From NCBI RefSeq assembly GCF_006345805.1, contig NC_043008.1, forward strand, positions 49,724,001-49,788,000: a DNA stretch of 64,000 nt, in the 5' to 3' direction. Origin of the DNA: Octopus sinensis (Eukaryota). A model generated the notes under the pieces. It had not been told where the DNA came from, searched no databases, and saw nothing but the letters and a program-made list of their open reading frames with translations. Shown here in pieces: positions 1,629 through 55,545 of the stretch; the first letter of the stretch is position 1, and every line of letters starts with the position of its first letter. The position numbers and the translations under genes are program-made.

Positions 1629-1629
1629 G

Positions 1630-27663: not shown

Positions 27664-29291
27664 CAGTTGCGGCCAAAATGTTCAGAACAGCATTGTTTTC
27701 AACAGAAAAGTAGGTATAAGTTTTTATCAAAGTTGTTTTATATTCTGTAATTTTCACACACAATAAATACAATATTAATTGTTATTGTCTGAGATTTTGG
27801 TGTAATTTGAGCGGATAATACAAAAGTTATGGATGATTTAGTGATTTACTGCAAAACCCATGGCGGCCAAAATGATCAGAACGGTTGCTTTTACTCCGTG
27901 TTTTAGTATATTTAACTGGCGAACTCTAATGTTTTGAATTTGTTTACGTGCTGGTTCGTTTATTAAACATTAGTAAGAATATCTGCAGTGTACTTTGTTA
28001 ATATAATGCCACTTACTCCATTACCAATTCGTCAGCAGATTATTAAGCTTCGCAAGAAGGATAATTTAAGTATTGGGTCTATTGCAAAGATTGTTAACAA
28101 GTCAAAAAGTGTTTTTCATGGTATTCTTAAGGTCTTCGATGATTGTGGTTCATGTAAAGCAAGAAAGTCTACAGGTAGGCCAAGAAAAACGACCAAGAGA
28201 GAAGATTGTGCTATGGTAAAGTTGGTTAAAAAGGACAGATTTAAAACTGCTGCTGCTGTTTCTCGGGAAATGAGCATTGTACTGAAGAAAACGTTATGTC
28301 GAAAAACTGTGTTTCATCATTTAGTTGAACATAACCTACAAGCAAGATCACCTGCAGTGAAGCCACTGATCAGCTCCAAAAATAAAAAGTGTCGTCTTAC
28401 CTTTGCAACCGAACATGTGTTGTGGTCTCAAGAAAAATGGCAAACGGTGCATTTCAGTGATGAATCTAAGTTTATGTTATTTGGCTCAGATGGGAAAAGG
28501 TACGTTCATTGAAAAGTAGGTGAAAAATTGTCGCCTAAATGCCTTAAGACTGTGTTAAATTCAGTGGAGGAAGTGTCTTGATTTGGGGAATGATATCTGG
28601 AGATGGTGTGGGCTCTTTGGTGCGATTACATGGAAAGGTAAATGCAGGAGTTTATAGACAACTTGTAAAAGATCATGTCTTGCCTGTGCTGAGAAATTCA
28701 ACTAAGCGACCACCCATATTCATGCAGGACAATGCCCCATGTCACAAGGCTAAGGTGGTCATGAACTTCCTCAAGGCTGAAAAGGTTATTATTATGGATT
28801 GGCCTGCTCAAAGCCCAGATCTCAATCCTATTGAAAATGTGTGGAATATTCTAGGAGAAAGTTTGAAAGCCAGAAATCCTAAAACAACCGAGCAATTATG
28901 GAATGCCCTTCAGGAAGAATGGAATAAGATCACCTAGCAAGAAATTGAAAATTTTATTTCCTCATGCAGTCGAAGATGTCAAAGTGTGATTGAAGCTAAA
29001 GGGCTTCACACTAAATATTAAATAATTCCAGTATTCTCTGTCATTTTTGATTATTTTGTTATGTTTTCAACCGTTCTGATAATTTTGCCCGCCATAGGTT
29101 TTGCAGTAAATCACTAAATCATCCATACCTTTTGTATTATCCTCTCAAATTACATCAAAATCTCAGACAATAACAATTAATATTGTATTTATTGTCTGTG
29201 AAAATTGTAGAACATAAAACAATTTTGTTAAAAACTAATACCTACTTTTCTGGCAAAAACAATGCCGTTCTGAACATTTTCGCTGCAAAAG
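27664..29291 (+). mobile_element. Full-length Tc1-family transposon (DD34E), inactivated
   Basis: TA flanks and TIRs of about 225 bp with inner/outer direct repeats. Transposase 28006..29021 has HFSDESKF, FMQDNAPCH and SPDLNPIENVW, with stops at 28510 and 28935 and a frameshift. Confidence 0.95.
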
Positions 29292-30702: not shown

Positions 30703-31099
30703 CTGAAAAGTAGACAAAATATTTATTAGAAATTGGCAAAAATATCTCTGAAACACTCTAACACAATTATTGATCTGAGAAGTTCAATCCTGTTTCATGT
30801 AAAGATTGTCCATTTCAATCATTGATGCCACCAATTTGGGAGAACCATTCAGTTTATGATAAATTCTTGGAAACAAGAAATAGTTGATGACAACATCAAA
30901 TGATGAACAGATAGCTAACATCATCATCGGCATCATTTTGATATCAACTTTTCAATTCTTGCATGGAACAGATGGAATTTATTGAGGCAGGTTTTCTATG
31001 ACTAGATGCTCTTCCAGTTACCAACATACGTGTGTGTTTGTGTGTGTGTATCCAAATATATTTACACACAGATGTGTATGTATGTGTGTTTGTATAAGA

Positions 31100-34090
31100 T
31101 GGCTGCTTATAAATGCCAAAACCTTCCCAGGCGAAGAATGTACCACAGGCTGGTAGTTAGTGACTTCTGGGTAAGGGCTAAATGGTTGCCCAGAAAACGA
31201 CCAGCAAGGAGAAGAAGGGTCTGGAGACTTATAGATCTCGCAAATGGACAGAGATTTAGAGACATATTACTCGAAGCCTTTGACGAAATAGAAGGGGATA
31301 TAGCTTCACATGGTATAGAAGACAACTGGAGGTTCCTACGGGACAACCTGCTAAGGGCCACCGACCAGATCTGTGGATGGTGCAAAGTCCCCTCTCGACC
31401 CAAAATAACGTGGTGGTGGAACAATGTTATTGACAGGGCTATTAGACAAAAGAAACAGGCTTGGAAGAACGGTGGTAGCAGGGAAGTGTATCAGACTGCC
31501 AGATGGGAAGCTAGGAGGTAGGTTTATTTAGCCAGAGGGGAAGCAGATAAGAAAAAATTGGCCAATGTTCTGTGCTGCAAGGACGAAAGACTTGAGGTAT
31601 TTCGTGTTGTAAGACAGTGTGTGAGAGAGAATTGTGATGTGGTAGGAGAGAAATGTGTTTGCATGGATGATGATTCACTTGCGCTAAATGAGGATGCAAA
31701 GAGAGAGGTTTGGAGATGCCACTATGAAAGGTTCCTGAATAAAGAAAATGAATGGGAGAAAGAGAGTCTGCCGAATGTCGACCCAACAGAGGGATCAGCT
31801 ATCCGAGTTTACAGTAACTTGTAGATAAAGCAATTAGAAGTATGAAGACAGGGAAAGCCCCAGGCCCATCGGGAATTACTGCAGAGATGCTCAAAATATC
31901 TTGCAATGTCGGCTATTGCCTAGTCACCCATATAGTTAACCAGGTGATACACGAAGGACTCATACCCAATGACTGGTGTAGCAGAATAATAGTTAACTGC
32001 GACAAAGGTAAAGGTGACTCTTTAGATACAAATAATTACAGAGGTATCAGTTGGATCAGGTAATGAAGGTCACGGAGAGGGTCATAGCCCAACTAATTAG
32101 GGAGAGAGTCAGTCTAAATGAGATGCAGTTTGGGTTCGTGCCAGGGAAAAGCACCACTGATGCCATATTTCTGGTAAGACAGCTGCAGGAGAAGTACCTA
32201 GCTAAAGATAAGCCCCTGTACCTGGCTTTCGTTGACATGGAGAAAGCCTTTGACAGGGTGCCCCGATCCCTTATCTGGTGGTCAATGAAGAAACTAGGGA
32301 TAGATGAATGGTTAGTGAGAGCGGTGCAAGCCATGTACAGGGACGCTGTAAGTAAGGTAAGGGTTGGTAATGAGTACACTGAAGAATTCAGGGTAGATGT
32401 AGGGGTCCACCAAGGGTCAGCCCTCAGCCCCCTCCTATTTATCATAGTACTCCAGGCAATAACGGAGGAATTCAAGACAGGATGCCCCTGGGAGCTCCTC
32501 TATGCTGATGACCTTGCTCTAATTGCTGAGTCACTATTAGAACTAGAGGAGAAGTTTCAGGCGTGGAAACAAGGATTAAAATTGAAGGGCCTTAGAGTCA
32601 ACCTAGCTAAAACCAAAGTCCTAATAAGTAGGAAGGCAGGTAAACCACAAAACCCTTCAGGTGAATGGCCCTGCTTGATCCGTAGAAAAGGCGTAGGTAG
32701 AAACTCCATAAGATGTACCCAGTGTAAGCTATGGACACATAGGAGGTGCAGCAATATCAAAGGGAGGCTAACTGGGAAGATAGATTTTGTGTGTGGCAAA
32801 TGCTCAGATGCTATGAACCCTGAAACTGTGCAGAGAACAGCTTCTGTCACATTCCTGGGAGAAAAACTAGAAGTAGTTGATAGCTTCCGTTACCTGGGTG
32901 ATCAAGTCAGTAGTGGAGGAGGGTGCACTGAAAGTGTAGCTGCTAGAATAAGAATATCTTGGTCAAAGTTCAATGAGCTCTTACCTCTGCTGGTGACAAA
33001 GGGCCTCTCGCTCATAGTAAAATGTAGACTGTATGACGCATGCGTACGAACAGCCATGCTACATGGCAGTGAAACATGGGCTGTGACTGCTGAGGACATG
33101 TGTAAGCTCGCAAGGAATGAAGCCAGTATGATCTGATGGACGTGTACTGTCAGTGTGCATACTTGACAGAGTGTAAGTACCTTGAGAGAAATGTTGGACC
33201 TAAGAAGCATCAGATGAGGTGTGCAAGAGAGGCATCTACGCTGGTATGTTCATGTGGCGAGAATGAATGTGGACAGCTGTGTGATAAAATCCCACACCCT
33301 AGCGGTTGAGGGAACCTGCGGAAGAGGTAGACCCAGGAAGACCTGGGATGAAGTGGTGAAGCACCGCCTTCAAACTTTAGGCCTCACCGAGGAAATGACT
33401 AGTGACCAAGACTTTTGGAAATATGCTGTGCTTGAGAAGACCCAGCAAGCCAAATGAGACCATAATCTCGTGGCCTATGCCAGGGGCGTTACCAGCCCTC
33501 TTATGCGTACCTTTTCCTTCTTTGGACAGTAAAACTCTGCTTGCAAAGACCTGTTGAGGCAAGTGAAATCAAAGATTTAAAATCAGAAATCAAAATCAAA
33601 TTTGATGACTGGCATCCCTGCTAGCGGGGTGCAAAAAATGTCATCATTGACAGAGCGGCTAACTGGCTTCCATGCCAGTGGCACTTAAAAGGCACCATTC
33701 GAGCGTGATCATTACCAGTGTCGCCTTAAAGAACATCATCCGAGTGTGATCTTTGCCAGAGCGACTATCTGGCCTCCATGCCGGTGGCATGTAAAAGACA
33801 CCATTCGCGCGTGATCGTTACCAGCATCGCCTTACTGGCACCTGTGCTGGTGGCATGTGTAAAAGATTCGAGTGAGGTCGTTGCCAGTACCACCTGACTG
33901 GCCCCATGCCGGTGGCACGTAAAAGCACCCACTACACTCTCGGAGTGGTTGGTGTTAGGAAGGGCATCCAGCTGTAGAAACTCTGGCAGATCAAGATTGA
34001 AACCTGGTGCAGCCATCTGGTTCGCCAGCCCTCAGTCATTCGTCCAACCCATGCTAGCATGGAAAGCAGATGCTAAACGATGATGATGAT
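31100..34090 (+). mobile_element. RTE-clade LINE, 5'-truncated, RT with stops and frameshifts
   Basis: ORF 32051..33136 has QFGFVPGKSTTDAIF, FVDMEKAFDRVP, QGSALSPLLF and YADD. The 3' UTR carries GCCGGTGGCACGTAAAAGCACC-type repeats and a (GAT)n tail. Confidence 0.97.
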
Positions 34091-34177: not shown

Positions 34178-34289
34178 CTTTTGTTATTCCTTTTGTTATT
34201 CGAGAAAATTTTGTCACAGAGAAATTCTGATATTTTCTTTCTACATTTGTTTTGAATTGATACTCCGAGTAATTGCTGATCACACTTAT
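34178..34289 (-). CDS. Receptor gene: domain-4 second exon (112 bp, phase 0-1)
   Basis: Acceptor CTATAATTTCAG and weak donor G|GTCTGA. Reads ISVISNYSEYQFKTNVERKYQNFSVTKFSRITKGITK. Phases fit both neighbours. Confidence 0.6.
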
Positions 34290-35886: not shown

Positions 35887-37720
35887 TACACTGGCCAAAA
35901 TAAGTTTCAGAGCAATGATGATAGTTCTATTCCTTCATTAATTCATTTTTAACAAAGCTGTATAAAATTATTTTACTTTTTACAGTCTATGTAGAATTTT
36001 TTCTCTTTTGAATGATATAAGTGTTATATATCTTTCTACAATTTGAATAATTTTAATGCACAAAATAAGTTTAAGACCATACCAACATTATTTTGTTTAA
36101 ATTGAAAATTTACAGCAGAAATGATCAATGAACAAAAATTTATTATTAGTATCGAGTTCTATGTGGGATGACGTTAGCAGCTGGGGAGCTGACCGGAAGG
36201 GGCAGGAGGGACGCGCACGCAGGCAGGGCAGGATTCGGCCTTTTTCAATTGACGTCACCGAGCGAGTAAGACACGTGAGCAATTTGTTAAGGTAGGGGAG
36301 AAGCAGCTGCTATTTCTAGTGTTTGGGTTGGGCTGCGTTGAAGGATCTATTATCGCTGAAAGGTCTTCGTTTGAGCAAAGAGAAGGTAGGTGCCTTTATT
36401 TCGAATCTCTCGCATACACCACATTCTATAGCCATTATTTTCAATTACAGCCTTACAACGGTGGGACATGGTGTTCAACAGTTGAGCACAAAATTCACTT
36501 GGAATGTTCTGCCATATTCCTTCAATAAAATTATATAATAGGGACAAATTTGTTGGTTTTTTTAGCATGAATTCCTTTAGAAACATAATTCCATATGTTT
36601 TCTATCAGATTCAAATCTGGGCTCTGTGGAGGCCACTCAATAACCACCATATTAATGCACTCAAAATATTGCAAAACTTCCCTAGCCTTATGAACAGGGC
36701 AATTGTCCTGCTGGAAAATAGATCTCCTTGGCATCTGATTATTTAAATATGGCAGCACATTTTCATTTACTAATTGCAGCTAACCTATACTGTTCAGTCT
36801 GCCATCAACCTAAGTTATTGATTGTAGCATACACCATTACCCCACCACCTGCTGCTCGCATGGTTTTCTTGACACATTTAGGATGGAATTCTTCAGTTGA
36901 ACGGTATCTAAAATAAGTCTATCCATCTGATCCAAAGATACAGAAGTGGGATTCATTGCTCCAAAATCTTTTGGCTAGTCTTCGGCTGTCCATTCAATAT
37001 GGCTTTTAGCAAACTTCATCTGCTTCTGCCAGTTAGTCGCAGAAATTATCAGCTTTTTTCAAGAGATCCAGCCAAACAGTCCAAATTTTTAGACTGTTTC
37101 TGACAGTTTGTGGTGTAAAGTTCATGTCAGTTTCATCAGATAATTGCTTGCAAACGTCCACTGTTGTTAGCATTTGGTTACCTTGAGAGAGCCTATGAAT
37201 TCAGCAATCCATCTATACTGTTGCTTTTCTTGGCGTACCCATTTTTTGCCAATCTTTGTATCGGCTAGTGGCTTGATAAAGCCTCCATGCTTGAACACAA
37301 GCCATTTTACTGTGTCCTAATTGCTTGCTAGTGTTCACAAAGGACACATTTTGCTGATGAAGCAGCATGATCTTCGATCTAGTGATTGGGCTGATACTAC
37401 AACGCTTTCCCATAGTGAATTAATGTGTAACAATGTTCAATTATTAAACAAAGCAGTGCAGTACGACCAGCCATATGACCACACATTTATTTAGCTTATT
37501 AATTTGCATAGTTTTGGTTTGGTCTTAAACTTATTTTGCCAACAATTTCTAACAATTTCATTTAATTGCATATTAACATTATTTGAATTGTAGAAAGATA
37601 TATAATACCTATATCATTCGAAAGAGAAACAAATTCTACATAAACTATAAAAAGTAAAATAATTTTATACAGCTTTGTTAAAAATACATCAATGGAGGAA
37701 TAGAACTGTCATCATGATTT
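35887..37720 (-). mobile_element. Tc1-family transposon, decayed, with ~200-bp TIRs and a nested solo LTR
   Basis: 35887..36085 is inverted at about 37515..37720. Fragments MGKRCSISP..., IFQQDNCPVH and SPDLNLIENIW on the minus strand. Confidence 0.85.
36162..36423 (+). mobile_element. Solo LTR (262 bp), same family as 47164..48369
   Basis: TG...CA termini with a 5-bp TSD TTCTA at 36157-61 and 36424-28. Confidence 0.92.
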
Positions 37721-37741: not shown

Positions 37742-37835
37742 TTTTCTGTAGTTTACATGAATATTTAGCTGGGATTGTCTTATGTATGTTAACACAACCG
37801 TATTCTTCTTTAGTATGTATTCTTGTCAAGACAAT
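37742..37835 (-). CDS. Receptor gene: domain-3 second exon (94 bp, phase 0-1)
   Basis: Acceptor ATGATTTTTCAG and donor A|GTAAGA. IVLTRIHTKEEYGCVNIHKTIPAKYSCKLQK has the same length and Y-x-C...C spacing as exon 49163..49256. Confidence 0.85.
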
Positions 37836-38282
37836 CTGAAAAATCATAATAATAATGAAATTATTGTATACAGTGCTCAGGTATACCACCATCATAAAAG
37901 AAAATTTCAAGCTGATTAGTTTTAATACATATTTAAATTAACACAAATGTCTACATTGATAGAAGAGCAGTTTTTGACTTTATGAGTCTGGTCCATTCAT
38001 TTTATCTGCGTGAGAGAGAGGACTTTTGTCATTATACACACTCACACACACATGTGCATACACACACATATACACATGCATACACATTCAGGAACACACA
38101 CACACATGTAGACACACACACATATACATATATGAAAAGTGAGAACATTAATTGTGAATAATAACCTACTCAGACTGTGGTGTACCAATCCAACCCATGC
38201 CAGCATCAAAAGAGGTCATAAAAGGATGATAACAATGATAGTGGTGGTGATAATGATGATGATGATGAGGATTATGTATCTT

Positions 38283-38316
<34 letters not shown>

Positions 38317-38761
38317 AACATACTCAAATACATACACACTGACACCTACACAATATAATTACTCCAGTTAATGAGGGAAGCCTCTATGTGATGAGTTGAC
38401 TGTCTATAAATAAATGTCAAATCTCCTTTAAATCACATTAGCTGGTTGGTGTTACGAAGGTTATCCAGCTGCAGAAACCATGCCAAATCAGACTAGAGTT
38501 TGGTGCAGTCCCACAGCTTACTAGCCCTGGTCAAACCATCCAACCCAAACCATGGATAATGGACGTTAAATGATGATGATGTTGTACTGTCTTAGAAAAG
38601 AAGGACACACTGAATAAAGGTCACGAGTACATACATCTGGGAAATGAACATGGTGGTCATAGTTGAATGTATTTGAATCTAGGTTCACTGAATCAAGACT
38701 GATCAGGGCTTTAACAATAACAATGACAGTAAATAAATAAATAAATAAATAAATCTTTAAT

Positions 38762-41700
38762 AGCAAACAGAATTCAAGGTAAAAATTCTTACTTTGAATA
38801 TGTCAAAATATTTGCTACTGCCTTCTTAAAATATAAAAGCAAACACAGAATTCAAAAAGGTGAAAATTCTTACTTTGAATATGTCAAAATATTTGCAACT
38901 GTCTTCTTAAAATATAAAAGCAAACAGAATTCAAAAAGGTGAAAATTCTTACTTTGAATATGTCAAAATATTTGCTACTGCCTTCTTAAAGTATAAAAGC
39001 AAACAGAATTCAAAAAGGTGAAAATTCTTACTTTGAATATGTCAAAATATTTGCAACTGCCTTCTTAAAATATAAAAGCAAAAACAGAATTCAAAAAGGT
39101 GAAAATTCTTACTTTGAATATGTCAAAATATTTGCTACTGTCTTCTTAAAATAAAAAAGCAAACACAGAATTCAAAAAGGTGAAAATTCTTACTTTGGAT
39201 ATGTCAAAAGATTTGCTACTGTCTTTAAAGTATATTTCAGCCTCACCAATGCCTATTTTTCCTATATTAGTAAAAGCAGAGAATGTCGGGAGATAAGCTA
39301 ACTTTTTGAATGTTAGACTTTGTGAAGAATTTGTTCCACTGCCAGTCACTCCAACAGATATCTTTATTTCTTCTATATATTTAATTAGTTTGGATAGAGA
39401 GCTTAGTTCTATTTTCCACTCAAGACAGAATTCAAAAAGATGAAAATTCTTACTTTGAATATGTCAAAATATTTGCTACTGCCTTCTTAAAATATAAAAG
39501 CAAACACAGAATTCAAAAAGGTGAAAATTCTTACTTTGAATATGTCAAAATATTTGCTACTGTCTTCTTAAAATATAAAAGCAAACACAGAATTTAAAAA
39601 GGTGAAAATTCTTACTTTGAATATGTCAAAATATTTGCAACTGTCTTCTTAAAATATAAAAGCAAACACAGAATTCAAAAAGATGAAAATTCTTACTTTG
39701 AATAGGTCAAAATATTTGCAACTGTCTTCTTAAAATATAAAAGCAAACACAGAATTCAAAAAGGTGAAAATTCTTACTTTGAATATGTCAAAATATTTGC
39801 TACTGCCTTCTTAAAATATAAAAGCAAACAGAATTCAAAAAGGTGAAAATTCTTACTTTGAATATGTCAAAATATTTGCTACTGTCTTCTTAAAATATAA
39901 AAGCAAACACAGAATTCAAAAGGTGAAAATTCTTACTTTGAATATGTCAAAATATTTGCTACTGTCTTCTTAAAATATAAAAGCAAACAGAATTCAAAAA
40001 GGTGAAAATTCTTACTTTGAATATGTCAAAATATTTGCAACTGTCTTCTTAAAATAAAAAAGTAAACACAGAATTCAAAAAGGTGAAAATTCTTACTTTG
40101 GATATGTCAAAAGATTTGCTACTGTCTTTAAAGTATATTTCAGCCTCACCAATGCCTATTTTTCCTATATTAGTAAAAGCAGAGAATGTCGGGAGATAAG
40201 CTAACTTTTTGAATGTTAGACTTTGTGAAGAATTTGTTCCACTGCCAGACACTCCAACAGATATCTTTATTTCTTCTATATTTTTAATTAGTTTGGATAG
40301 AGAGCTTAGTTCTATTTTCCACTCAAGACAGAATTCAAAACACAGAATTCAAAAAGATGAAAATTCTTACTTTGAATATGTCAAAATATTTGCTACTGCC
40401 TTCTTAAAATATAAAAGCAAACACAGAATTCAAAAAGATGAAAATTCTTACTTGGAATATGTCAAATTTTTTTTTTTTTTTTTTTTTGAATATGTCAAAA
40501 TATTTGCTACTGCCTTCTTAAAATATAAAAGCAAACACAGAATTCAAAAAGGTGAAAATTCTTATTTGAATATGTCAAAATATTTGCTACTGCCTTCTTA
40601 AAATAAAAAAGCAAACACAGAATTCAAAAAGGTGAAAATTCTTACTTTGAATATGTCAAAATATTTGCAACTGCCTCTTAAAATATAAAAGCAAACACAG
40701 AATTCAAAAAGGTGAAAATTCTTACTTTGTATATGTCAAAATATTTGCTACTGTCCTCTTAAAATATAAAAGCAAACACAGAATTCAAAAAGGTGAAAAT
40801 TCTTACTTTGAATATGTCAAAATATTTGCAACTGCCTCTTAAAATAAAAAAGCAAACACAGAATTCAAAAAGGGGAAAATTCTTACTTTGGATATGTCAA
40901 AATTTGCTACTGTCTTTAAAGTATATTTCAGCCTCACCAATGCCTATTTTTCCTATATTAGTAAAAGCAGAGAATGTTGGGAGATAAGCTAACTTTTTGA
41001 ATGTTAGACTTTGTGAAGAATTTGTTCCACTGCCAGACACTCCAACAGATATCTTTATTTCTTCTATATTTTTAATTAGTTTGGATAGAGAGCTTAGTTC
41101 TATTTTCCACTCAAGACAGAATTCAAAACACAGAATTCAAAAAGATGAAAATTCTTACTTTGAATATGTCAAAATATTTGCTACTGCCTTCTTAAAATAT
41201 AAAAGCAAACAAGAATTCAAAAAGATGAAAATTCTTACTTTGAATATGTCAAAATATTTGCTACTGCCTTCTTAAAAATAAAAAGCAAACACAGAATTCA
41301 AAAAGGTGAAAATTCTTACTTTGAATATGTCAAAATATTTGCTACTGCCTTCTTAAAATATAAAAGCAAACAGAATTCAAAAAGGGGAAAATTCTTACTT
41401 TGAATATGTCAAAATATTGCTACTGCCTTCTTAAAATAAAAAAGCAAACACAGAATTCAAAAAGGTGAAAATTCTTACTTTGTATATGTCAAAATATTTG
41501 CTACTGTCCTCTTAAAATATAAAAGCAAACACAGAATTCAAAAAGGTGAAAATTCTTACTTTGAATATGTCAAAATATTTGCAACTGCCTTCTTAAAATA
41601 AAAAAGCAAACACAGAATTCAAAAGGAAAATTCTTACTTTGGATATGTCAAAAGATTTGCTACTCCTTTAAAGTATATTTCAGCCTCACCAATGCCTATT

Positions 41701-44700
41701 TTTCCTATATTAGTAAAAGCAGAGAATGTTGGGAGATAAGCTAACTTTTTGAATGTGACTTTGTGAAGAATTTGTTCCACTGCCAGACACTCCAACAGAT
41801 ATCTTTATTCTTCTATATTTTTAATTAGTTTGGATAGAGAGCTTAGTTCTATTTTCCACTCAAGACAGAATTCAAAACACAGAATTCAAAAAGATGAAAA
41901 TTCTTACTTTGAATATGTCAAAATATTTGCTACTGCCTTCTTAAAATATAAAAGCAAACACAGAATTCAAAAAGATGAAAATTCTTACTTTGAATATGTC
42001 AAAATATTTGCTACTGCCTTCTTAAAAATAAAAAGCAAACACAGAATTCAAAAAGGTGAAAATTTTACTTTGAATATGTCAAAATATTTGCTACTGCCTT
42101 CTAAAATATAAAAGCAAACACAGAATTCAAAAAGGTGAAAATTCTTACTTTGAATATGTCAAAATATTTGCAACTGCCTTCTTAAAATATAAAAGCAACA
42201 CAGAATTCAAAAAGGTGAAAATTCTTACTTGTATATGTCAAAATATTTGCTACTGTCCTCTTAAAATATAAAAGCAAACACAGAATTCAAAAAGGTGAAA
42301 ATTCTTACTTTGAATATGTCAAAATATTTGCAACTGCCTTCTTAAAATAAAAAAGCAAACACAGAATTCAAAAGGGGAAAATTCTTACTTGGATATGTCA
42401 AAAGATTTGCTACTGTCTTTAAAGTATATTTCAGCCTCACCAATGCCTATTTTTCCTATATTAGTAAAAGCAGAGAATGTTGGGAGATAAGCTAACTTTT
42501 TGAATGTTAGACTTTGTGAAGAATTTGTTCCACTGCCAGTCACTCCAAAGATATCTTTATTTCTTCTATATTTTTAATTAGTTTGGATAGAGAGCTTAGT
42601 TCTATTTTCCACTCAAGACAGAATTCAAAACACAGAATTCAAAAAGATGAAAATCTTACTTTGATATGTCAAAATATTTGCTACTGCCTTCTTAAATATA
42701 AAAGCAAACACAGAATTCAAAAAGATGAAAATTCTTACTTTGAATATGTCAAAATATTTGCTACTGCCTTCTTAAAATATAAAAGCAAACACAGAATTCA
42801 AAAAGTGAAAATTCTTACTTTGAATATGTCAAAATATTTGCTACTGCCTTCTTAAAATATAAAGCAAACACAGAATTCAAAAAGGTGAAAATTCTTACTT
42901 TGAATATGTCAAAATATTTGCAACTGCCTTCTAAAATATAAAAGCAAACACAGAATTCAAAAAGGTGAAAATTCTTACTTTGTATATGTCAAAATATTTG
43001 CTACTGTCCTCTTAAAATAAAAAGCAAACACAGAATTCAAAAAGGTGAAAATTCAAAATTAAAATTCTTACTTTGAATATGTCAAAATATTTGCAACTGC
43101 CTTCTTAAAATAAAAAAGCAAACACAGAATTCAAAAAGGTGAAAATTCTTACTTTAGATATGTCAAAAGATTTGCTACTGTCTTTAAAGTATATTTCAGC
43201 CTCACCAATGCCTATTTTTCCTATATTAGTAAAAGCAGAGAATGTCGGGAGATAAGCTAACTTTTTGAATGTTAGACTTTGTGAAGAATTTGTTCCACTG
43301 CCAGACACTCCAACAGATATCTTTATTTCTTCTATATTTTTAATTAGTTTGGATAGAGAGCTTAGTTCTATTTTCCACTCAAGACAGAATTCAAAACACA
43401 GAATTCAAAAAGATGAAAATTCTTACTTGAATATGTCAAAATATTTGCTACTACTGCCTTCTTAAAATATAAAAGCAAACACAGAATTCAAAAAGATGAA
43501 AATCTTACTTTGAATATGTCAAAATATTTGCAACTGCCTTCTTAAAATATAAAAGCAAACACAGAATTCAAAAAGGTGAAAATTCTTACTTTGAATATGT
43601 CAAAATATTTGCTACTGCCTTCTTAAAATATAAAAGCAAACACAGAATTCAAAAAGGTGAAAATTCTTACTTTGAATATTTCAAAATATTTGCAACTGCC
43701 TTCTTAAAATATAAAAGCAAACACAGAATTCAAAAAGGTGAAAATTCTTACTTTGTATATGTCAAAATATTTGCTACTGTCCTCTTAAAATATAAAAGCA
43801 AACACAGAATTCAAAAAGGTGAAAATTCTTACTTTGAATATGTCAAAATATTTGCAACTGCCTTATAAAAAAGCAAACACAGAATTCAAAAAGGTGAAAA
43901 TTCTTACTTTGGATATGTCAAAATATTTGCTACTGTCTTTAAAGTATATTTCAGCCTCACCAATGCCTATTTTTCCTATATTAGTAAAAGCAGAGAATGT
44001 TGGGAGATAAGCTAACTTTTTGAATGTTAGACTTTGTGAAGAATTTGTTCCACTGCCAGTCACTCCAACAGATATCTTTATTTCTTCTATATTTTTAATT
44101 AGTTTGGATAGAGAGCTTAGTTCTATTTTCCACTCAAGACAGAATTCAAAACACAGAATTCAAAAAGATGAATATTCTTACTTTGAATATGTCAAAATAT
44201 TTGCTACTGCCTTCTTAAAATAAAAAGCAAACACAGAATTCAAAAAGATGAAAATTCTTACTTTGAATATGTCAAAATATTTGCTACTGCCTTCTTAAAA
44301 TATAAAAGCAAACACAGAATTCAAAAAGGTGAAAATTCTTACTTTGAATATGTCAAAATATTTGCTACTGCCTTCTTAAAATATAAAAGCAAACACAGAA
44401 TTCAAAAAGGTGAAAATTCTTACTTTGAATATGTCAAAATATTTGCAACTGCCTTCTTAAAATATAAAAGCAAACACAGAATTCAAAAAGGTGAAAATTC
44501 TTACTTTGAATATGTCAAAATATTTGCAACTGCCTTCTTAAAATATAAAAGCAAACACAGAATTCAAAAAGGTGAAAATTCTTACTTTGTATATGTCAAA
44601 ATATTTGCTACTGTCCTCTTAAAATATAAAAGCAAACACAGAATTCAAAAAGGTGAAAATTCTTACTTTGAATATGTCAAAATATTTGCAACTGCCTTCT

Positions 44701-45740
44701 TAAAATAAAAAAGCAAACACAGAATTCAAAAAGGTGAAAATTCTTACTTTGGATATGTCAAAATATTTGCTACTGTCTTTAAAGTATATTTCAGCCTCAC
44801 CAATGCCTATTTTTCCTATATTAGTAAAAGCAGAGAATGTCGGGAGATAAGCTAACTTTTTGAATGTTAGACTTTGTGAAGAATTTGTTCCACTGCCAGA
44901 CACTCCAACAGATATCTTTATTTCTTCTATATTTTTAATTAGTTTGGATAGAGAGCTTAGTTCTATTTTCCACTCAAGACAGAATTCAAAACACAGAATT
45001 CAAAAAGATGAAAATTCTTACTTTGAATATGTCAAAATATTTGCTACTGCCTTCTTAAAATATAAAAGCAAACACAGAATTCAAAAAGATGAAAATTCTT
45101 ACTTTGAATATGTCAAAATATTTGCTACTGCCTTCTTAAAATATAAAAGCAAACACAGAATTCAAAAAGGTGAAAATTCTTACTTTGAATATGTCAAAAT
45201 ATTTGCTACTGCCTTCTTAAAATATAAAAGCAAACACAGAATTCAAAAAGGTGAAAATTCTTACTTTGAATATGTCAAAATATTTGCAACTGCCTTCTTA
45301 AAATATAAAAGCAAACACAGAATTCAAAAAGGTGAAAATTCTTACTTTGTATATGTCAAAATATTTGCTACTGTCCTCTTAAAATATAAAAGCAAACACA
45401 GAATTCAAAAAGGTGAAAATTCTTACTTTGAATATGTCAAAATATTTGCAACTGCCTTCTTAAAATAAAAAAGCAAACACAGAATTCAAAAAGGTGAAAA
45501 TTCTTACTTTGGATATGTCAAAAGATTTGCTACTGTCTTTAAAGTATATTTCAGCCTCACCAATGCCTATTTTTCCTATATTAGTAAAAGCAGAGAATGT
45601 TGGGAGATAAGCTAACTTTTTGAATGTTAGACTTTGTGAAGAATTTGTTCCACTGCCAGTCACTCCAACAGATATCTTTATTTCTTCTATATTTTTAATT
45701 AGTTTGGATAGAGAGCTTAGTTCTATTTTCCACTCAAGAT
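38762..45740 (-). repeat. Exon-derived higher-order tandem array: about 60 81-bp monomers plus 9 copies of the domain-3 exon body
   Basis: Monomer period 81 bp (e.g. 45061 to 45142). The ~200-bp unit recurs every ~750-900 bp. On the minus strand the unit plus the adjacent monomer is the coding exon 45508..45740. Confidence 0.95.
45508..45740 (-). CDS. Receptor gene: domain-3 first exon (233 bp, phase 1-0)
   Basis: Strong acceptor CTCCTTTCTTCTTTAG and donor AAA|GTAAGA. Reads D-LEWKIELSSLSKLIKNIEEIKISVG...KSFDISK, with W-x-hydrophobic-x-hydrophobic as in the other domains. Phases join 49163 and 37835. Confidence 0.85.
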
Positions 45741-46049
45741 CTAAAGAAGAAAGGAGAAAATGAAAAGAGCAATGAAAAAATTAAATAGTAGCTGTGATAC
45801 ATTAACAAAAGAAATGTGCTGCAAGAAAAATGATGACTTATTTGACATTTAGAGATTTGAGTTATTCGTCAGCAGAAAACGACTGATTTTCTTAACATTA
45901 ACCTTTGTGTCTTCATGTTTCTGTTGAAATATGTTTAATTTCATTTAATTTTGACAATAATGAAGAATTTATTAAGTAACTTTGCCATTATTAAGCTGAT
46001 GTTTGGAATATGAATTAACATGGAATTTTAATGAAAAGTTGTCATTAAG

Positions 46050-46884
46050 GTCACTTTAAAACAAGGAATTTGTATCATAGAACTAGGGTTTGTTTCAGGT
46101 TGTTTGGTATAGAATGGGTTAAGAAATAAAGGAATGGTAGTTGTAATATTTGTACTTATATTTAATGAGTTGAATAAGTAATAAAAGAAAGAATTATCAT
46201 CAATCTTTTCTAATGAGACTAAACATTTATAATAGAAAATGACAGGCCTCATGGAGACAAAGTGGCCTAGTTCTTTTTGAGTATTGTGCTTCATGGAGGC
46301 AAAGTGACTGAGTTCCTTTTGAGTATTGGGTCTCTCAGTGGCAATGACCAAGACCTTTGGCATTATGTCGTACATGAGATGAAGACCCATCAAACTGAGT
46401 AAAATTGCAGTCATGGCAGGTACCGGTTTTATGCAAATGACACTAATACCAGTGGCACATAAAAGCACCCGTTGCACTCTTGGGGTGTTTGGCATTCAAA
46501 TGGACATCAATCTGTAGGAAACCATGTCAAATTAGACTGGAGTCTGGTGCAGCCTCCCAGCTTACTAGCCCTGGTTAAACCGTCCAACTCATGCCAGCAT
46601 GGACAATGGATGTTAAATGATGATGGTGAGGAGGAATTTGTTGTATGTATGTAGCGTATGTGAATCAAGAAATAAAGAAATGGTAGTTGTCGTTAAAATC
46701 ACTTTAAAACAAGGAATTTGTATCATAGAACTAGGGTTTGTTTCAGGCCGGTTGGTATCAAAAAGGTTAAGAAATAAAGGAATGGTAGCTGTAACATTTA
46801 AAGTTGAGTTATGTTTAATGAGTTGAATAATTTATATAAGACAGAATTATCATCAACAATGTTTACTAATGAGACTAAACATTT
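46050..46884 (+). repeat. Diverged ~180-bp direct repeat flanking an RTE tail insertion
   Basis: TCACTTTAAAACAAGGAATTTGTATCATAGAACTAGGG...AATGAGACTAAACATTT occurs near 46050-46227 and 46699-46884. Confidence 0.8.
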
Positions 46885-48369: not shown

Positions 48370-49162
48370 GGAGCAAAAGAGCTTTTCTTTTTGTCTGACA
48401 TTGCCTCTCAAAAATAGATTTCAAAAATAATTGGCTGGAAAAATGTTTGTATGTGTTATAATGGAGTTCAGAGATGAAACAGAAATAGTTCAGGTCAATA
48501 CTCTCAGTTATAGTATTATTATCTAAAATATTTCAGATTTGAGGAAGGCTATCTGCATAGCATCACAGGCAAGTGTCTTCCACTATTGCCCCTGGATTTA
48601 AAAGACAGAAACTGAAATCACTCACACACACACACAAAGGTTGTTTTGTCCCCTTAACATCATACAGTAGTTGTAAAATGAGCATCACCATCATGCAAGC
48701 TGTGTCCTTTGTATCAAACCTTCCACAAATTATATACTGACCATAATGAAATATTACAATATTTGGAAACATGTAAGGGTTGGTGACAGGAAGAGCATCC
48801 ATCCATAAAAAATCTAATTAATGAATTCTCTTCTGATTCAAGCAGGCATGGCAAAGTAAACATCAAAATGCCATTGCCACTACCATCACCACCGACAACT
48901 ATAACTGGATATATGACAGAATCTCAATGTAGAGCTATGAAATATTGTTTAGTTTTACATCTTTCAGTTGGAATCTGGTTTTGGAGTTTGGAAGATTAAC
49001 TGTTGATGGTAAATCAACACAGCAGCATGAATCATTTAGAATTCACCTTGCTCACTCTCTTTTTTTATCATTAACAACTTGTAAAAGCCACACAGGCAGC
49101 AAGGTAGAACTACTTCATAGTTTCTAATGAAGTGACATAAGAAATGCCTTCTCTCAACTTAC

Positions 49163-49256
49163 CACTTCTCAATGAACACTCATGGTAAGGATTACTTTGT
49201 TTAAGAAGATAAATACAGGAATATATTTTGGAAGTTTCCATGTTTTTCAGTTTGAT
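49163..49256 (-). CDS. Receptor gene: domain-2 second exon (94 bp, phase 0-1)
   Basis: Acceptor TTTTTTCTTTTACTTTAG and donor G|GTAAGT. Reads IKLKNMETSKIYSCIYLLKQSNPYHECSLRS. Confidence 0.88.
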
Positions 49257-50181
49257 CTAAAGTAAAAGAAAAAAGCAACAAAATTATGTCTCAGGAATTA
49301 TATAGGTTTAGACAGGTGTCATTTTGTTCTGGATCCAGTAATTAAACGGATGAGAAATAATTAACTTATCCATCCACTCAGCAGTTCTATCTCTACAAAT
49401 ATTGATAGCTTTATAGATAGTCATCAAGGCCATGTTTTCAGCAGCTGAACAACAGATGATGGTAGCAGAGAAGGAACCTGGTCTTGTCATCTTAGTATAT
49501 TCATCTTGAAAATATTATTCTATTCTAAATCATAAATTCATGTAGAACTGAATGTAGAAATAGAGAAAACACTAAGTGACAGTTAGGTAAAGAGAAGAAA
49601 GAAAAAATGTTGACTGTTAGGAAGGATGGGGTCATTGTAGGTAGGATAGAGAACAGATAGTTCCAGTAGCATCTTTCATAACACAGAATAAACAGCAAAA
49701 AGGATAAATGGTAAACTTAGGCCTGGCATGAAGTGAACACAGAACAGTGATGTTAAGTCATTCATCCAAACTATCTGCTTTCTAGAAGAGGAAAGAATAA
49801 TCATCAATGCACAGCAGTGCGTTTTACTGAATTATGTGTGGGCATACATGTATGTAACTTATTTTATTTACTCAAATCCAGAAACCCTAAAAACAAGTAA
49901 TAAATTGGTTTCAAATTTTGGAACAAGTTGAGTAAGTTTGTGGGAGGGGATAAGTTGAGACATTGAACCCCAGTGTTTAAATGGTATTTCTGACACTGAA
50001 AGAATGAAAGACAGAATTTGTATTCTGAATGTAAAGATGGATGAAATGCCACTAAACAGCTAATGATTCTACCAGTCTGTCACGTTGAAAACAAGTAGTA
50101 TATTGGAGTTGAGTCAAGCAGTTATACTCTTTTCTAATTGAATAACTAACTAATTCAATAATTAATATAGGGTTTACTCAC

Positions 50182-50387
50182 AGTCTTGTCCAGCCAAAAT
50201 TTTCCTGTTGTCGATAACTCTAGTCTTGACTTTGTATTCATTTTCGTTGGAAGAAAGAACGGTGCATTTGTTGTTTTAGAATTTGCTCTAAACTTTAAGT
50301 AGTTTTTATCATAAGGCTTTATTTCAAAAGAATATTCGTAATTGTCATACGTCTTACTATGTATAACTGACATGTTCCAGTGTACCC
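50182..50387 (-). CDS. Receptor gene: domain-2 first exon (206 bp, phase 1-0)
   Basis: Acceptor CTGTTACTTTCTAG and donor ACT|GTGAGT. Reads G-VHWNMSVIHSK...GKFWLDKT. Confidence 0.88.
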
Positions 50388-50574
50388 CTAGAAAGTAACA
50401 GAACAAATTTGCCCATCAGTGAAAACATTTCAAAATAAATGATCATAACACAATAATTGTTTTATAAGAAGAGCGGATTTAAAATGAAATTATTAGAATA
50501 TGATTGAAAGCCATTTACTTTCTCTGCTCTTCCAATACAGATTAGGACACTTCTTTTCATGTGGAAAATGCTCA

Positions 50575-52228
50575 AAGGATGGGTCCACCAAGGTTCAGTC
50601 CTCAGCCCCCTCCTATTTATCATAGTCCTCTAGGCAATAACAGATGAACTCAAGACAGAATGCACATGGGGGCTCCTCTGTACTGATGACCTTGCTCTAA
50701 TTGCCGAGTTTCTATCAGAACTAGAGGAGCAGTTTCAGGTGTGAAAGCAAGAATTAGAATCGAAGGGCTTTAGAGTCAACCTAGCTAAAACCAAAGTCCT
50801 AATAAATAGGAAGGCAGACAAACCACAAATCCCTTCAGGTAGAAGGCCCTGCTTGATATGTAGAAAAGGCATAGGTAGAAGCTCTATAAGATGTACCCAG
50901 TGTAAGCTATGGATACATAAGAAGTGCAGCAATATCAAAGGAAGGCTAACTGGGAAGATAGTTTTTGTATGTAGCAGATGCTCAGGAGCAATAAACCCTG
51001 AAAATGTGCAGAGAGCAACTTCTGCCACATTCCAGGGAGAAAAACAAGTAGTTGATAGCTTCCGTTACCTAGGTGACCAAGTCAGTAGTGGTGGTGGGTG
51101 CTCTGAAAGTGTAGCTGCTAGAATAAGAATAGCCTGAGCAAAGTTCAGAGAGGTCCTACCTCTGCTGGTGACAAACGGCCTCTTGCTCAGAGTAAAAGGT
51201 AGACTGTATGACGCATGTGTACAAACAGTCATGCTTCACGGCAGTGAAACATGGGACGTGACTGCTGAGGACATGCGTAAGCTTGTAAGGAATGAAGCCA
51301 GTATGGTCCGATGGATGTGTAATGTCAATGTACATATTAGACAGAGTGTAAGTGCCTTGAGAGAAAAGTTGGACCTAAGAAGCATCAGATGTAGCATGCA
51401 AGAGAGATGACTGCACTGGTATGGTCATGTGGTGAGAATGGATGAGGATAGCTGTGTGAAAAATGCCACACCCTAGCAGTTGAGGGAAACTGTGGAACCT
51501 GAGGAAGACCTAGGATGAGGTGGTGAAGCATGACATTTGAACATTAGGTTTCACCGAGGCAATGACTACTGACTGAGACCTTTGGAAATATACTGTGCTT
51601 GAGAAGAACCAGCAAGCCAAGTGAGACCATAACCTGTGGCCTATGACAGGAGTGTAACCAGCCCACTTATGCATACCTTTCCTTCATTGGACACTAAACT
51701 CTGCTTGTGAAGACCTGTTGAGGCAAGTAAAATCAAAATCAAATTCGATGACAGCACCGCATGACTGGCATCCATGCTAGTGGAGCGCTAAGAGCACCAT
51801 CCGAGCATGATCGTTGTCAGGGCTGCTGACTGGCTCCCATGCCGGTGGCACGTAAAAAGCAGCATTTGAGCGTGATCGTTACCAGCATCGCCTTACTGGT
51901 ACTTGTGCCGGTGGCAAATGCAAAACAATATTCAAGCGAGGTCGTAACCAGTGCTGCTGGACTGGCTCCTGTGCAGGTGGCACATAATAAACACCATTTG
52001 AGCATGGCCATTGCCAGAACCACCTGACTCACTCTCATGCTGGTAGCACATAAAAGCACCCACTACACTCCTAGAGTGGCTGGCATTAGGAACGGCATCC
52101 AGCTGTTGAAATTCTGTCAGATCAGATTGCAGCCGGGTGTAGCCATCTGGCTCACAAGCCCTCAGTCAAATCGTCTAACCCATGCCAGCATAGAAAGTGG
52201 TCGTTAAACAATGATGATGATGATGATG
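50575..52228 (+). mobile_element. 5'-truncated RTE-clade LINE
   Basis: Colinear with 32400..34090 (RT C-half, GRSSIRCTQCKLW, VVDSFRYLGD), with the 3' UTR repeats and (GAT)n tail. Confidence 0.93.
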
Positions 52229-52489
52229 AACGGCGAACTATATATGTAAAGAAGGTTAATGTCTTATAACAGGCCTTCCCAAATTTTATTAAACTGTAAC
52301 CCCTTTTCTTTCATTAACACTTCATCATACCCCTTTCTATGATTCAATGCTCTCTTGCTAAGATTTAACCACCCCATCTTTAATGTACATATACTTAATA
52401 TTAAGCTAGACTAATAAAGCTCCAAATAGATTTATGGTCAAAGGTGATTACTTGAACTTTTAGTACATCACTTCAGTCACACTTGTATA

Positions 52490-55400: not shown

Positions 55401-55545
55401 TGTAGTCTTTTTAGTTATTGTGGGTAGAGAGCACTCAGACCAGCTGGTATCTCTCTTCCACGTTTCAGCAGTCTTGACAAATCTCCAGATTTGTCCATCT
55501 TCCCGAAGACTGAAGCTTTCCTGTAGAGCTGAGTTCCTATTCAGG
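52490..55545 (-). mobile_element. CR1/L2-like LINE: APE endonuclease and RT, 5'-truncated
   Basis: APE ORF 54502..55326 (TVTETW, GDFNHP, DLLF, GDSDH). RT ORF 52565..54268 (QYGFVPNSSC, YLDFAKAFNSV, QGSVLGPLLF, YADD). (ATT)n 3' tail at 52490-52513. Confidence 0.95.

What the first reader, a model, noticed from the sequence alone, without database searches (positions are those of the whole stretch)
38762..45740. The 7-kb intronic 'satellite' is an amplified coding exon; five extra in-frame copies could act as cassette exons
Seen in sequence: on the minus strand, the rightmost unit (45508..45740) is a true exon with a strong acceptor and a GTAAGA donor, and its phases fit the flanking exons. Eight more copies follow, separated by runs of 81-bp monomers. 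They lack the original acceptor but have a pyrimidine-rich junction ending in an AG inside the exon (TTTTGAATTCTGTCTTGAG|TGG AAA ATA). That defines 225-bp, phase 0-0, stop-free units at 44748..44972, 43908..44132, 43153..43377, 40097..40321 and 39194..39418. The three middle copies (about 40887, 41638, 42389) have 1-2 bp deletions in an indel-rich stretch, possibly read errors. Intact copies differ at a few residues (T/S, S/Y, N/Y). Inference: the receptor could vary its ectodomain length or sequence by including zero to several extra domain-3 cores, and array length may differ between individuals. This would be an exon array at an early stage of formation.
Basis: partly seen in the sequence, partly recalled or inferred. 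Interest (0 to 1): 0.85.

Follow-up and report, generated by a model that had tools for sequence, protein, structure and literature searches.

The report
Exon-derived tandem array inside an octopus intron
A 7-kb repeat inside an intron of an octopus-only membrane-protein gene grew from the end of one exon and carries eight extra copies of that exon, but these copies look like young, unused by-products of repeat expansion rather than working alternative exons.

Summary
On the minus strand, exon 6 (45508-45740) of Octopus sinensis LOC115218112 is followed by eight more exon bodies separated by runs of 81-bp monomers. Five give the stated 225-nt open units and three carry 1-2-bp deletions. The monomer is the last 32 nt of exon 6, its GTAAGA donor and 49 nt of intron.

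A distant paralog has one copy of this boundary. The O. bimaculoides ortholog and the neighbouring paralog have about 2.4 monomers. O. vulgaris, from an independent Nanopore assembly, has about 113 monomers, then one extra exon body with the same junction. So the array is genuine, predates the sinensis/vulgaris split and turns over fast.

The cassette-exon reading is not supported:
- The only in-frame acceptor is GAG|, whereas all 11 authentic acceptors of the gene are YAG.
- Exon 6 is only the core of a domain built from exons 5-7.
- None of the retrieved annotated proteins of this family, from three octopus species, repeats the exon.
- Both annotation pipelines end the protein inside the array.
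- Substitutions among copies look neutral.

Most likely this is an intronic minisatellite with a higher-order repeat and acceptor-less pseudo-exons. It may act as a splicing or polyadenylation trap. No transcript data were available.

The parts
45508..45740 (-). Authentic exon 6 of LOC115218112. It is 233 nt, phase 1 to 0, with a TAG acceptor and the donor AAA|GTAAGA.
   Evidence: tblastn to P0001, P0002 and P0003; sequence and translation
44979..45507 (-). Monomer run 1, about 6.5 units of 81 bp. Each unit is the exon tail (32 nt), the GTAAGA donor and 49 nt of intron. The run ends in the junction GAATTCTGTGTTTTGAATTCTGT|CTTGAG.
44748..44978 (-). Exon-body copy 2. It has no acceptor and starts at exon nt 3. 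The 225-nt open unit is 44748-44972. It carries T>S and S>Y.
44139..44747 (-). Monomer run 2, about 7.5 units.
43908..44138 (-). Exon-body copy 3. It is open and carries S>Y.
43384..43907 (-). Monomer run 3.
43153..43383 (-). Exon-body copy 4. It is open and carries T>S and a synonymous TCC>TCT.
42618..43152 (-). Monomer run 4. It is rich in 1-bp deletions.
42389..42617 (-). Exon-body copy 5, with two 1-bp deletions. It is frameshifted as assembled.
41865..42388 (-). Monomer run 5.
41638..41864 (-). Exon-body copy 6, with deletions of 1, 2 and 1 bp and one substitution. It is frameshifted as assembled.
41116..41637 (-). Monomer run 6.
40887..41115 (-). Exon-body copy 7, with a 2-bp deletion near its 3' end. 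It is frameshifted as assembled.
40328..40886 (-). Monomer run 7. It contains a run of about 20 A.
40097..40327 (-). Exon-body copy 8. It is open and carries T>S.
39425..40096 (-). Monomer run 8, about 8.3 units. It ends in the simple junction GAATTCTGT|CTTGAG, without the 14-bp duplication.
39194..39424 (-). Exon-body copy 9. It is open, carries N>Y, and keeps the ancestral ACT and CCG states.
38762..39193 (-). Terminal monomer run, about 5.3 units. Its last, degenerate monomer is orthologous to the one that ends the short array in O. bimaculoides and the long array in O. vulgaris.
37836..38761 (-). Unique 3' part of intron 6. It is collinear with O. bimaculoides (89%) and with O. vulgaris.
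37742..37835 (-). Exon 7 (IVLTRIHTKEEYGCVNIHKTIPAKYSCKLQK). It starts in phase 0 and is intact.
49160..49256 (-). Exon 5. It ends in phase 1. It supplies the first strands and a conserved Cys pair of the same domain.

Best explanation
The block is a lineage-specific tandem array in intron 6 of a gene for an octopus-only type-I membrane protein. The gene is O. sinensis LOC115218112, and the window corresponds to CM016870.1 at about 49.724-49.788 Mb.

The array grew stepwise.
1. An 81-bp tandem duplication spanning the exon-6/intron-6 boundary created a second copy of the exon tail and its 5' splice site. The duplicated piece is 32 nt of exon, the donor and 49 nt of intron.
2. Out-of-register recombination between these units expanded them into a minisatellite in the common ancestor of O. 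sinensis and O. vulgaris.
3. One non-homologous join brought a whole exon body, minus its acceptor, into the array. The join links monomer ...GAATTCTGT to exon nucleotide 3 (CTTGAG...).
4. In O. sinensis, a higher-order unit of about 760 bp (an exon body plus 5-8 monomers) was amplified to nine exon bodies. In O. vulgaris the monomer run instead grew to about 113 units, with a single extra exon body.

The extra exon bodies are acceptor-less pseudo-exons. They are still open because they are young and are homogenised by the same recombination, not because they are translated.

The array also acts on the real exon. Monomer-type variants (TCT>TAT, TCC>TTC) have been copied into the true exon 6 of O. 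vulgaris and into two O. sinensis copies.

For expression, the array places 62 exact decoys of the exon-6 donor in the intron. It also adds monomer-borne AAG/CAG acceptors and an AATAAA in each exon body. The most likely consequences are mis-splicing or premature termination, which would yield a product lacking the transmembrane segment, or simply a long intron that is removed normally.

Shown: the anatomy, the cross-species series and the state of the splice sites. Inferred: the recombination mechanism and the effect on transcripts.
For: - Anatomy of the monomers, higher-order units and junctions.
- Stage 0: the distant paralog LOC115217897 has a single exon-6/intron boundary with no duplication.
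- Stage 1: the O. bimaculoides ortholog (L002) and the neighbouring O. sinensis paralog (L001) have only about 2.3-2.4 monomers and no extra exon.
- Stage 2: O. vulgaris (L004) has exon 6, about 113 monomers and one exon body. The junction is identical, including the 14-bp duplication. The 3' flank and exon 7 are the same. That assembly was made independently from ONT and 10x data (PMC10700109).
- The TCT>TAT variant is shared by both O. vulgaris copies and by two O. sinensis internal copies. The true exon tail in O. vulgaris equals the monomer consensus.
- Two biallelic sites in the exon copies show all four allele combinations, which indicates exchange between copies.
- Acceptors: 11 of 11 authentic ones are YAG, and the cryptic one is GAG.
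- Exon 5 spliced to the cryptic acceptor is out of frame.
- Substitutions among the O. sinensis copies are 3 nonsynonymous to 2 synonymous.
- Exons 5-7 fold as one compact unit (pTM 0.76, pLDDT 80). The model matches PLAT/LH2 domains over 107-135 of its 146 residues, whereas exon 6 covers 78 of them.
- The O. sinensis RefSeq model XP_029643761.1 reads through the exon-6 donor and stops in the first monomer.
- The O. vulgaris model CAI-type P0038 splices exon 6 to a monomer acceptor (TTTTAAG|AAGGCAGTT) and stops at the next GTAA.
- GTAAGA density is 9.0 per kb in the array and 0.28 per kb in the rest of the gene.
- No retrieved protein in the 5.8-billion-cluster collection carries a repeated exon 6 apart from a fusion of neighbouring genes.
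Against: - No RNA data could be examined, so non-use of the internal copies is inferred from splice-site quality, domain structure and annotations. It was not observed.
- The pyrimidine content of the cryptic acceptor (0.71) lies within the range of the real acceptors (0.59-1.0), and a TTCAT branch-point-like motif lies upstream. Weak use is therefore conceivable.
- The exons downstream of the array (7 to 12, including the TM exon) are all intact. This suggests the full-length gene may still be expressed across the array, so the 'trap' effect may be small.
- The truncated gene models may only reflect the difficulty of aligning reads in repeats.
- The substitution count is too small to separate neutrality from weak constraint.
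- The family shows that duplicated ectodomain modules can be incorporated. Exons 3-4 are duplicated and included in LOC115217897 and LOC106873081.
Confidence: 0.75

Rival explanations
1. The internal copies are nascent cassette exons. Splicing from the donor of one copy to the GAG| junction acceptor of the next adds zero to several 75-aa units. This varies the length and sequence of the ectodomain.
For: - Five units are exactly 225 nt, phase 0-0 and stop-free, and each carries the authentic donor.
- The junction is moderately pyrimidine-rich.
- The copies differ at a few residues.
- The family has a precedent for duplicating an ectodomain module (exons 3-4) and including it.
Against: - The acceptor has G at -3. 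From general knowledge of the YAG consensus this is the most disfavoured base. It is absent from all 11 real acceptors of the gene.
- The unit is part of one domain, not a whole domain. The precedent in the family duplicated a two-exon module with its own splice sites.
- Dozens of closer, identical decoy donors and monomer acceptors compete with the proposed sites.
- No retrieved annotated isoform in three species contains the junction.
- O. vulgaris keeps only one extra copy, so the number of copies is not conserved.
- Openness is explained by about 99% identity to the real exon. Substitutions are 3 nonsynonymous to 2 synonymous.
Confidence: 0.07
2. The array is a functional switch. By trapping splicing or polyadenylation, it converts the gene's output from a membrane receptor to a secreted ectodomain fragment of 294-306 aa lacking the TM segment. 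Array size tunes the ratio of the two products.
For: - Two independent annotation pipelines, one of them using Iso-Seq and PASA, end the coding sequence in the array: O. sinensis by read-through, O. vulgaris by splicing to a monomer (PMC10700109).
- The second donor, 81 nt downstream, already exists in the ancestral 2.4-monomer state. Its use gives the same ...VRIFTFLNSVFAFLF* ending.
- Each intronic exon body carries an AATAAA.
- The paralogs have annotated isoforms that skip the TM exon, so soluble forms occur in the family.
Against: - Truncated models are a common artefact where reads cannot be placed in repeats.
- The fragment would end in the middle of the exon 5-7 domain, which argues against a well-folded product.
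- Array organisation differs greatly between sister species, as expected for a neutral array.
- The downstream exons remain intact.
Confidence: 0.15
3. The array, or its nine-copy higher-order structure, is an assembly artefact of the PacBio-based O. sinensis assembly.
For: - The middle units have an abnormal excess of 1-2-bp deletions.
- There is an odd run of about 20 A in one unit.
- Only one assembly of this species was available.
Against: - An array of the same monomer sits in the same intron, with the same junction and flanks, in an independent ONT assembly of the sister species.
- The units differ in monomer number (5.3-8.3) and carry unit-specific substitutions shared in nested patterns. 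A stutter artefact would give identical copies.
- At 7 kb, the array is within the span of single long reads.
Confidence: 0.03

Closest known systems
Intronic minisatellites/VNTRs and satellites with higher-order repeat (HOR) structure
   Same: - Head-to-tail monomers of fixed period (81 bp) at 93-100% identity.
- A larger unit of about 760 bp that is itself repeated.
- Rapid gain and loss between sister species.
- Signs of exchange between copies.
- The array lies wholly inside an intron.
   Different: - The monomer was born from an exon/intron boundary, so every unit carries the gene's own 5' splice site and 32 nt of coding sequence.
- The higher-order unit contains a nearly complete coding exon.
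- The repeat is locus-specific. Among the loci examined it occurs only at this boundary. The whole genome was not searched.
Coding VNTRs made of whole exons, such as the kringle IV-2 repeat of human LPA (recalled from general knowledge)
   Same: - An intragenic, multi-copy, kilobase-scale unit containing exon sequence that stays in frame.
- Copy number is labile.
- The exon encodes extracellular protein sequence.
   Different: - In LPA each unit carries complete exons with both splice sites, and all units appear in the mRNA.
- Here the copies lack the acceptor and the first 2 nt of the exon.
- Here each copy encodes only part of a domain.
- None appears in any retrieved annotated protein.
Tandem exon duplication giving mutually exclusive exon clusters, such as arthropod Dscam1 exons 4, 6 and 9 (recalled from general knowledge)
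   Same: An array of near-identical copies of one exon that encodes part of an ectodomain beta-sandwich in a cell-surface protein.
   Different: Exon 5 (phase 1) joined to the only candidate acceptor (phase 0) shifts the frame and stops after 12 codons.
- The copies have no proper acceptors.
- No selector or docking architecture was looked for or seen.
The whole-module duplication within the same gene family (exons 3-4 in LOC115217897 and LOC106873081)
   Same: The same family, the same ectodomain, and tandem genomic duplication of coding exons.
   Different: - That duplication copied two complete exons with their own splice sites, about 99 aa, and it is included in the annotated proteins.
- The intron-6 array copied a partial exon without its acceptor.

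Membership tests
Intronic minisatellite / higher-order tandem repeat | Head-to-tail copies of a fixed-length monomer with high identity | tested here: met
   TRF finds a period of 81 in runs of 5.4-8.8 copies at 93-97% match. There are 61 GTAAGAAT-phased units.
Intronic minisatellite / higher-order tandem repeat | A larger repeat unit built from several monomers plus another element | tested here: met
   There are nine units of 749-903 bp, plus a terminal unit of 660 bp. They are about 98-99% alike, and each is an exon body plus 5.3-8.3 monomers.
Intronic minisatellite / higher-order tandem repeat | Lies within an intron, with collinear unique flanks in relatives that lack the expansion | tested here: met
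   The flanks 45400-46240 and 38293-38916 are adjacent in O. bimaculoides (L002 29711-30562 and 30417-31034).
Intronic minisatellite / higher-order tandem repeat | Copy-number turnover between close relatives | tested here: met
   The series runs from one boundary copy (L005), to 2.3-2.4 monomers (L001, L002), to about 60 monomers plus 9 exon bodies (window), to about 118 monomers plus 2 exon bodies (L004).
Cassette or tandemly duplicated alternative exons | Each copy has its own functional 3' and 5' splice sites | tested here: not met
   The donor is present in all copies. The original acceptor is absent from all eight. The only in-frame AG is GAG|, with G at -3, whereas 11 of 11 authentic acceptors are YAG.
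Cassette or tandemly duplicated alternative exons | Reading-frame compatibility with the neighbouring exons | tested here: inconclusive
   Additive use after another copy is in frame for 5 of the 8 copies. Substitution for exon 6, with exon 5 spliced to the copy, shifts the frame and gives a stop after 12 codons.
Cassette or tandemly duplicated alternative exons | Transcripts or proteins that contain the alternative copies | not testable with these tools
   No RNA data were available. As an indirect test, no retrieved annotated or collected protein carries a second exon-6 unit except a fusion of neighbouring genes.
Cassette or tandemly duplicated alternative exons | Coding constraint on the copies | tested here: inconclusive
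   There are 3 nonsynonymous and 2 synonymous substitutions among the O. sinensis copies. Three of eight copies are frameshifted, but the deletions may be assembly errors.
Whole-exon coding VNTR (LPA KIV-2 type) | The repeat unit contains complete exon(s) with both splice sites, and all units are in the mRNA | tested here: not met
   The units start at exon nt 3 and lack the acceptor. No multi-unit protein is known.
PLAT/LH2 beta-sandwich domain (for the exon 5-7 module) | Structural match to solved PLAT/LH2 domains over the whole domain | tested here: inconclusive
   The AF2 model of exons 5-7 has pLDDT 80 and pTM 0.76. Foldseek gives probability 1.00 but TM-scores of only 0.40-0.51 and E-values from 8.5e-4 to 4e-2, over 107-135 columns, to lipase and lipoxygenase PLAT domains.
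PLAT/LH2 beta-sandwich domain (for the exon 5-7 module) | Sequence match to the Pfam PLAT model | tested here: not met
   There is no Pfam hit for the exon 6-7 peptide or for the full-length relatives P0010 and P0012.

The most novel reading that the evidence does not exclude
The array could be a copy-number-tunable splicing or polyadenylation trap built from the gene's own 5' splice site. It has about 60 decoys in O. sinensis and about 118 in O. vulgaris. It would set the ratio of membrane-bound receptor to truncated product. Occasional use of the weak GAG acceptor would feed extra exon-6 units into the mRNA. That would be a living example of how an exon array, or a gene-truncating satellite, is born from an exon/intron boundary.
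Probability: 0.15. Interest if true: 0.6.

Novelty: new member of a known kind. Interest (0 to 1): 0.33.

Why it matters
The locus gives an unusually clean stepwise series across paralogs and three octopus species. It runs from a single exon/intron boundary, to an 81-bp duplication, to a minisatellite, to capture of the exon body, to a higher-order repeat. The series shows how a tandem array can be seeded by a small duplication that includes a splice donor, and how the array then feeds variants back into the real exon.

There is a practical lesson too. The array breaks gene models in both published annotations. The head is annotated as a truncated protein of 294-306 aa. In O. vulgaris the tail is fused to the next genes, and the antisense frame of the repeat is annotated as a 1023-aa protein. 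Curators of cephalopod annotations should treat these models with caution.

The locus is also a natural test case for how spliceosomes cope with dozens of exact decoy donors in one intron.

It is not evidence for regulated variation of the ectodomain.

Tried and rejected
- Translating a stretch of the window as a long 'protein' to get round the length filter failed because of stop codons. Padding the exon with X worked.
- A search for short protein fragments (77-245 aa) that might come from transcript assemblies and reveal junctions found nothing. Transcript-level evidence could not be obtained that way.
- Exact look-ups of isoform X2 proteins failed because only the longest isoform is indexed. 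The X1 isoforms worked.
- The O. vulgaris fused model P0001 and the paralog P0006 have gene ranges above 100 kb, so no DNA was returned. The O. vulgaris array was reached through the truncated head protein P0038 instead.
- I suspected that the edge of the 99.2%-identical tract shared by the two tandem paralogs would coincide with the array, which would have suggested a chimeric crossover at the repeat. It does not. The tract ends near window position 49056, about 3.3 kb upstream of exon 6.
- The whole-ectodomain fold search gave no significant global match. Only the domain-level search was informative.
- Pfam finds nothing in the family.
- A literature search by locus name found no paper. A recent O. 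vulgaris repeat-annotation paper does not mention this repeat.
- An earlier reading of an S>F change in copy 4 was wrong. It is a synonymous TCC>TCT.


Full report
**What is there.** The window is AT-rich, transposon-laden animal DNA. Protein searches identify it as Octopus sinensis. Coordinates of fetched loci place it at CM016870.1, about 49,724,001-49,788,000 in GCA_006345805.1.

On the minus strand lies a 12-exon gene for a type-I membrane protein. It has a signal peptide (that exon lies outside the window), an all-beta ectodomain, a TM exon near 26980 and a tyrosine-rich tail. The exons map at:
- 62430-62167
- 57968-57882
- 50387-50179
- 49256-49160
- 45740-45508 (exon 6)
- 37835-37742 (exon 7)
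- 34624-34379
- 34292-34191
- about 30702
- about 26980
- 24164-23870

A further block at 16455-16378 matches only a segment of the fused O. vulgaris model.

The family is restricted to octopods. Only 23 cluster representatives among 1.84 billion proteins match it, and it has no Pfam domain.

**Check of the observation.**
- TRF reports 81-bp arrays from 38758 to 45539.
- Nine exon bodies are found.
- The rightmost has the real acceptor and matches the annotated proteins.
- The other eight begin at exon nucleotide 3, behind the junction ...GAATTCTGT|CTTGAG.
- Five give 225-nt open units at exactly the stated coordinates.
- Three carry small deletions.

One refinement: the 81-bp monomer itself is the last 32 nt of exon 6, the GTAAGA donor and the first 49 nt of the intron. 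Every monomer is therefore a copy of the exon/intron boundary. Intron 6 is 7,672 nt long and holds 62 decoy donors, 9.0 per kb against 0.28 per kb elsewhere in the gene. It also holds eight AATAAA hexamers inside the exon copies.

**Comparative series.**
- The distant paralog LOC115217897 (L005) has a single boundary with no duplication.
- The O. bimaculoides ortholog LOC106873066 (L002) and the neighbouring O. sinensis paralog LOC115217968 (L001) have exon 6 followed by only about 1.3-1.4 extra monomers. The unique intron that follows is the same one that flanks the array in the window.
- The O. vulgaris ortholog (L004) comes from an independent ONT/10x assembly (PMC10700109). It has exon 6, about 113 almost perfect monomers, one extra exon body with the identical junction including a 14-bp duplication, 4.4 monomers, the same 3' flank and exon 7.

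So the array is real. The capture of an exon body predates the sinensis/vulgaris split. The nine-copy higher-order repeat is specific to O. sinensis.

The TCT>TAT (S>Y) variant is the monomer-type base. It is found in both O. vulgaris copies and in two O. sinensis copies. The true O. vulgaris exon tail equals the monomer consensus. Two biallelic sites show all four combinations among the O. sinensis copies. These patterns point to repeated out-of-register exchange between exon tails and monomers. That mechanism is inferred.

**Are the deletions real?** In the four middle units, deletion events (21) are about as frequent as substitutions (18). Only 62% of O. sinensis monomers are exactly 81 nt, against 92% in O. 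vulgaris. This ratio is atypical of real mutation and fits consensus errors in the unpolishable interior of a repeat in a PacBio assembly.

**Test of the cassette-exon idea.**
1. The only in-frame AG at the junction is GAG|. All 11 authentic acceptors of this gene are CAG or TAG. G at -3 is the least favoured base in the general YAG consensus (established knowledge).
2. Exon 5 ends in phase 1. Splicing it to that acceptor gives VENRTKLSIQTN*. Dscam-like mutually exclusive use is therefore excluded, and only additive inclusion is in frame.
3. An AlphaFold model of exons 5-7 alone is a single compact unit (pLDDT 80, pTM 0.76). It matches PLAT/LH2 beta-sandwiches over 107-135 of its 146 residues. 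Exon 6 supplies only about five of its roughly twelve strands. The conserved Cys pairs lie in exons 5 and 7. Extra exon-6 units would insert partial domains. By contrast, the family's successful duplication copied exons 3-4 with their own splice sites.
4. No protein retrieved from the collection repeats exon 6, except P0001. P0001 is a gene model that runs together the tail of the O. vulgaris ortholog and the two following paralogs.
5. Among the O. sinensis copies, substitutions are 3 nonsynonymous to 2 synonymous. This is uninformative but consistent with neutrality.

**What the annotations show.** RefSeq XP_029643761.1 (306 aa) reads through the exon-6 donor and stops in the first monomer as ...FDISKVRIFTFLNSVFAFLF*. 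The O. vulgaris model (294 aa) splices exon 6 to a monomer acceptor 1.5 kb downstream and stops at the next GTAA as ...FDIFKKAVANILTYSK*. Its downstream exons are merged into the next gene model. Either the array truly traps transcripts, or it merely defeats read alignment. I cannot tell which. The downstream exons in the window are all intact.

**Verdict.** The structural half of the interpretation, an amplified coding exon with a labile array, is supported. The functional half, cassette exons that vary the ectodomain, is not. The best explanation is a young intronic minisatellite and higher-order repeat seeded by an 81-bp duplication of the exon/intron boundary. It carries acceptor-less pseudo-exons. 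It may have side effects on splicing, and it has a demonstrable conversion effect on the real exon's last codons.

Noticed in passing
window 1-6860 vs 57137-64000; more fully, window 49056-64000 vs L001 11892-26794: The gene and its downstream tandem paralog LOC115217968 share a tract of at least 15 kb at 99.2% identity, with a spacing of about 57.17 kb. The paralog starts at window 8723. The tract covers exons 1-5 and ends abruptly near 49056. Downstream of that point the two genes are only 68-93% alike. There the window gene is orthologous to O. bimaculoides LOC106873066 and to O. vulgaris 'A'. This suggests recent gene conversion or partial re-duplication of the 5' halves.
   Followed up: partly
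L004 36946-41542 (minus strand), O. vulgaris: The O. vulgaris annotation contains a 1023-aa 'protein' on the strand opposite the array. The antisense frame of the 81-bp repeat (27 codons) is open for more than 1058 codons (...SKHRIQKGENSYFEYVKIFATVFLKYK... repeated). This model is almost certainly spurious. The window has shorter versions on its plus strand, for example at 40200-40598.
   Followed up: yes
P0001 (O. vulgaris CAI9731411.1, 1009 aa): This gene model fuses the tail (exons 8-12) of the array-bearing gene with two further tandem paralogs. In the middle one, exon 6 is joined directly to exon 9, skipping exons 7-8. O. vulgaris therefore seems to have one more paralog ('B') here than is annotated in O. 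sinensis. Its intron 6 could not be fetched.
   Followed up: partly
L005 5600-9783 (O. sinensis LOC115217897); P0004 and P0007: Two paralogs carry a tandem genomic duplication of exons 3-4, about 99 aa of ectodomain. It is included in the annotated proteins. This is a completed module duplication in the same family.
   Followed up: partly
P0007 (O. bimaculoides LOC106873081 isoform X2); equivalent to window about 45570-45508: One annotated isoform of a paralog lacks the last 21 residues of exon 6. This implies an alternative donor inside the exon. The region that seeded the monomer is therefore alternatively spliced in at least one relative.
   Followed up: no
window 34191-34230 (minus strand, end of exon 9): A 12-nt tandem duplication (AATAACAAAAGG x2) adds GITK before the donor. 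The same insertion is present in the orthologous O. vulgaris tail (P0001 residues around 47-53).
   Followed up: no
window 31006-33454 (+), 52568-55410 (-), 27967-28934 (+), 36534-37419 (-): The introns are packed with transposon remains. These include non-LTR retrotransposon ORFs (RVT_1 at E 5e-28 and 2e-37; an endonuclease at 2e-14) and Tc1/mariner-type transposase pieces (HTH_Tnp_Tc3_2 and DDE_3). Two RT-bearing copies (32403-33170 and 50581-51345) are 88% identical.
   Followed up: partly
window 23870-24164 (minus strand, cytoplasmic exon): The cytoplasmic tail holds several tyrosine motifs (YEVYETF, SVYDQEI, GPYENQ, AYYI), including YxxL/I-like and YxN-like patterns. This fits a signalling or endocytic receptor. 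It was not analysed further.
   Followed up: no
window 40451-40645 (minus strand, in monomer run 7): A run of about 20 A interrupts one monomer in the middle of the array. It is either a small insertion or an assembly artefact.
   Followed up: no
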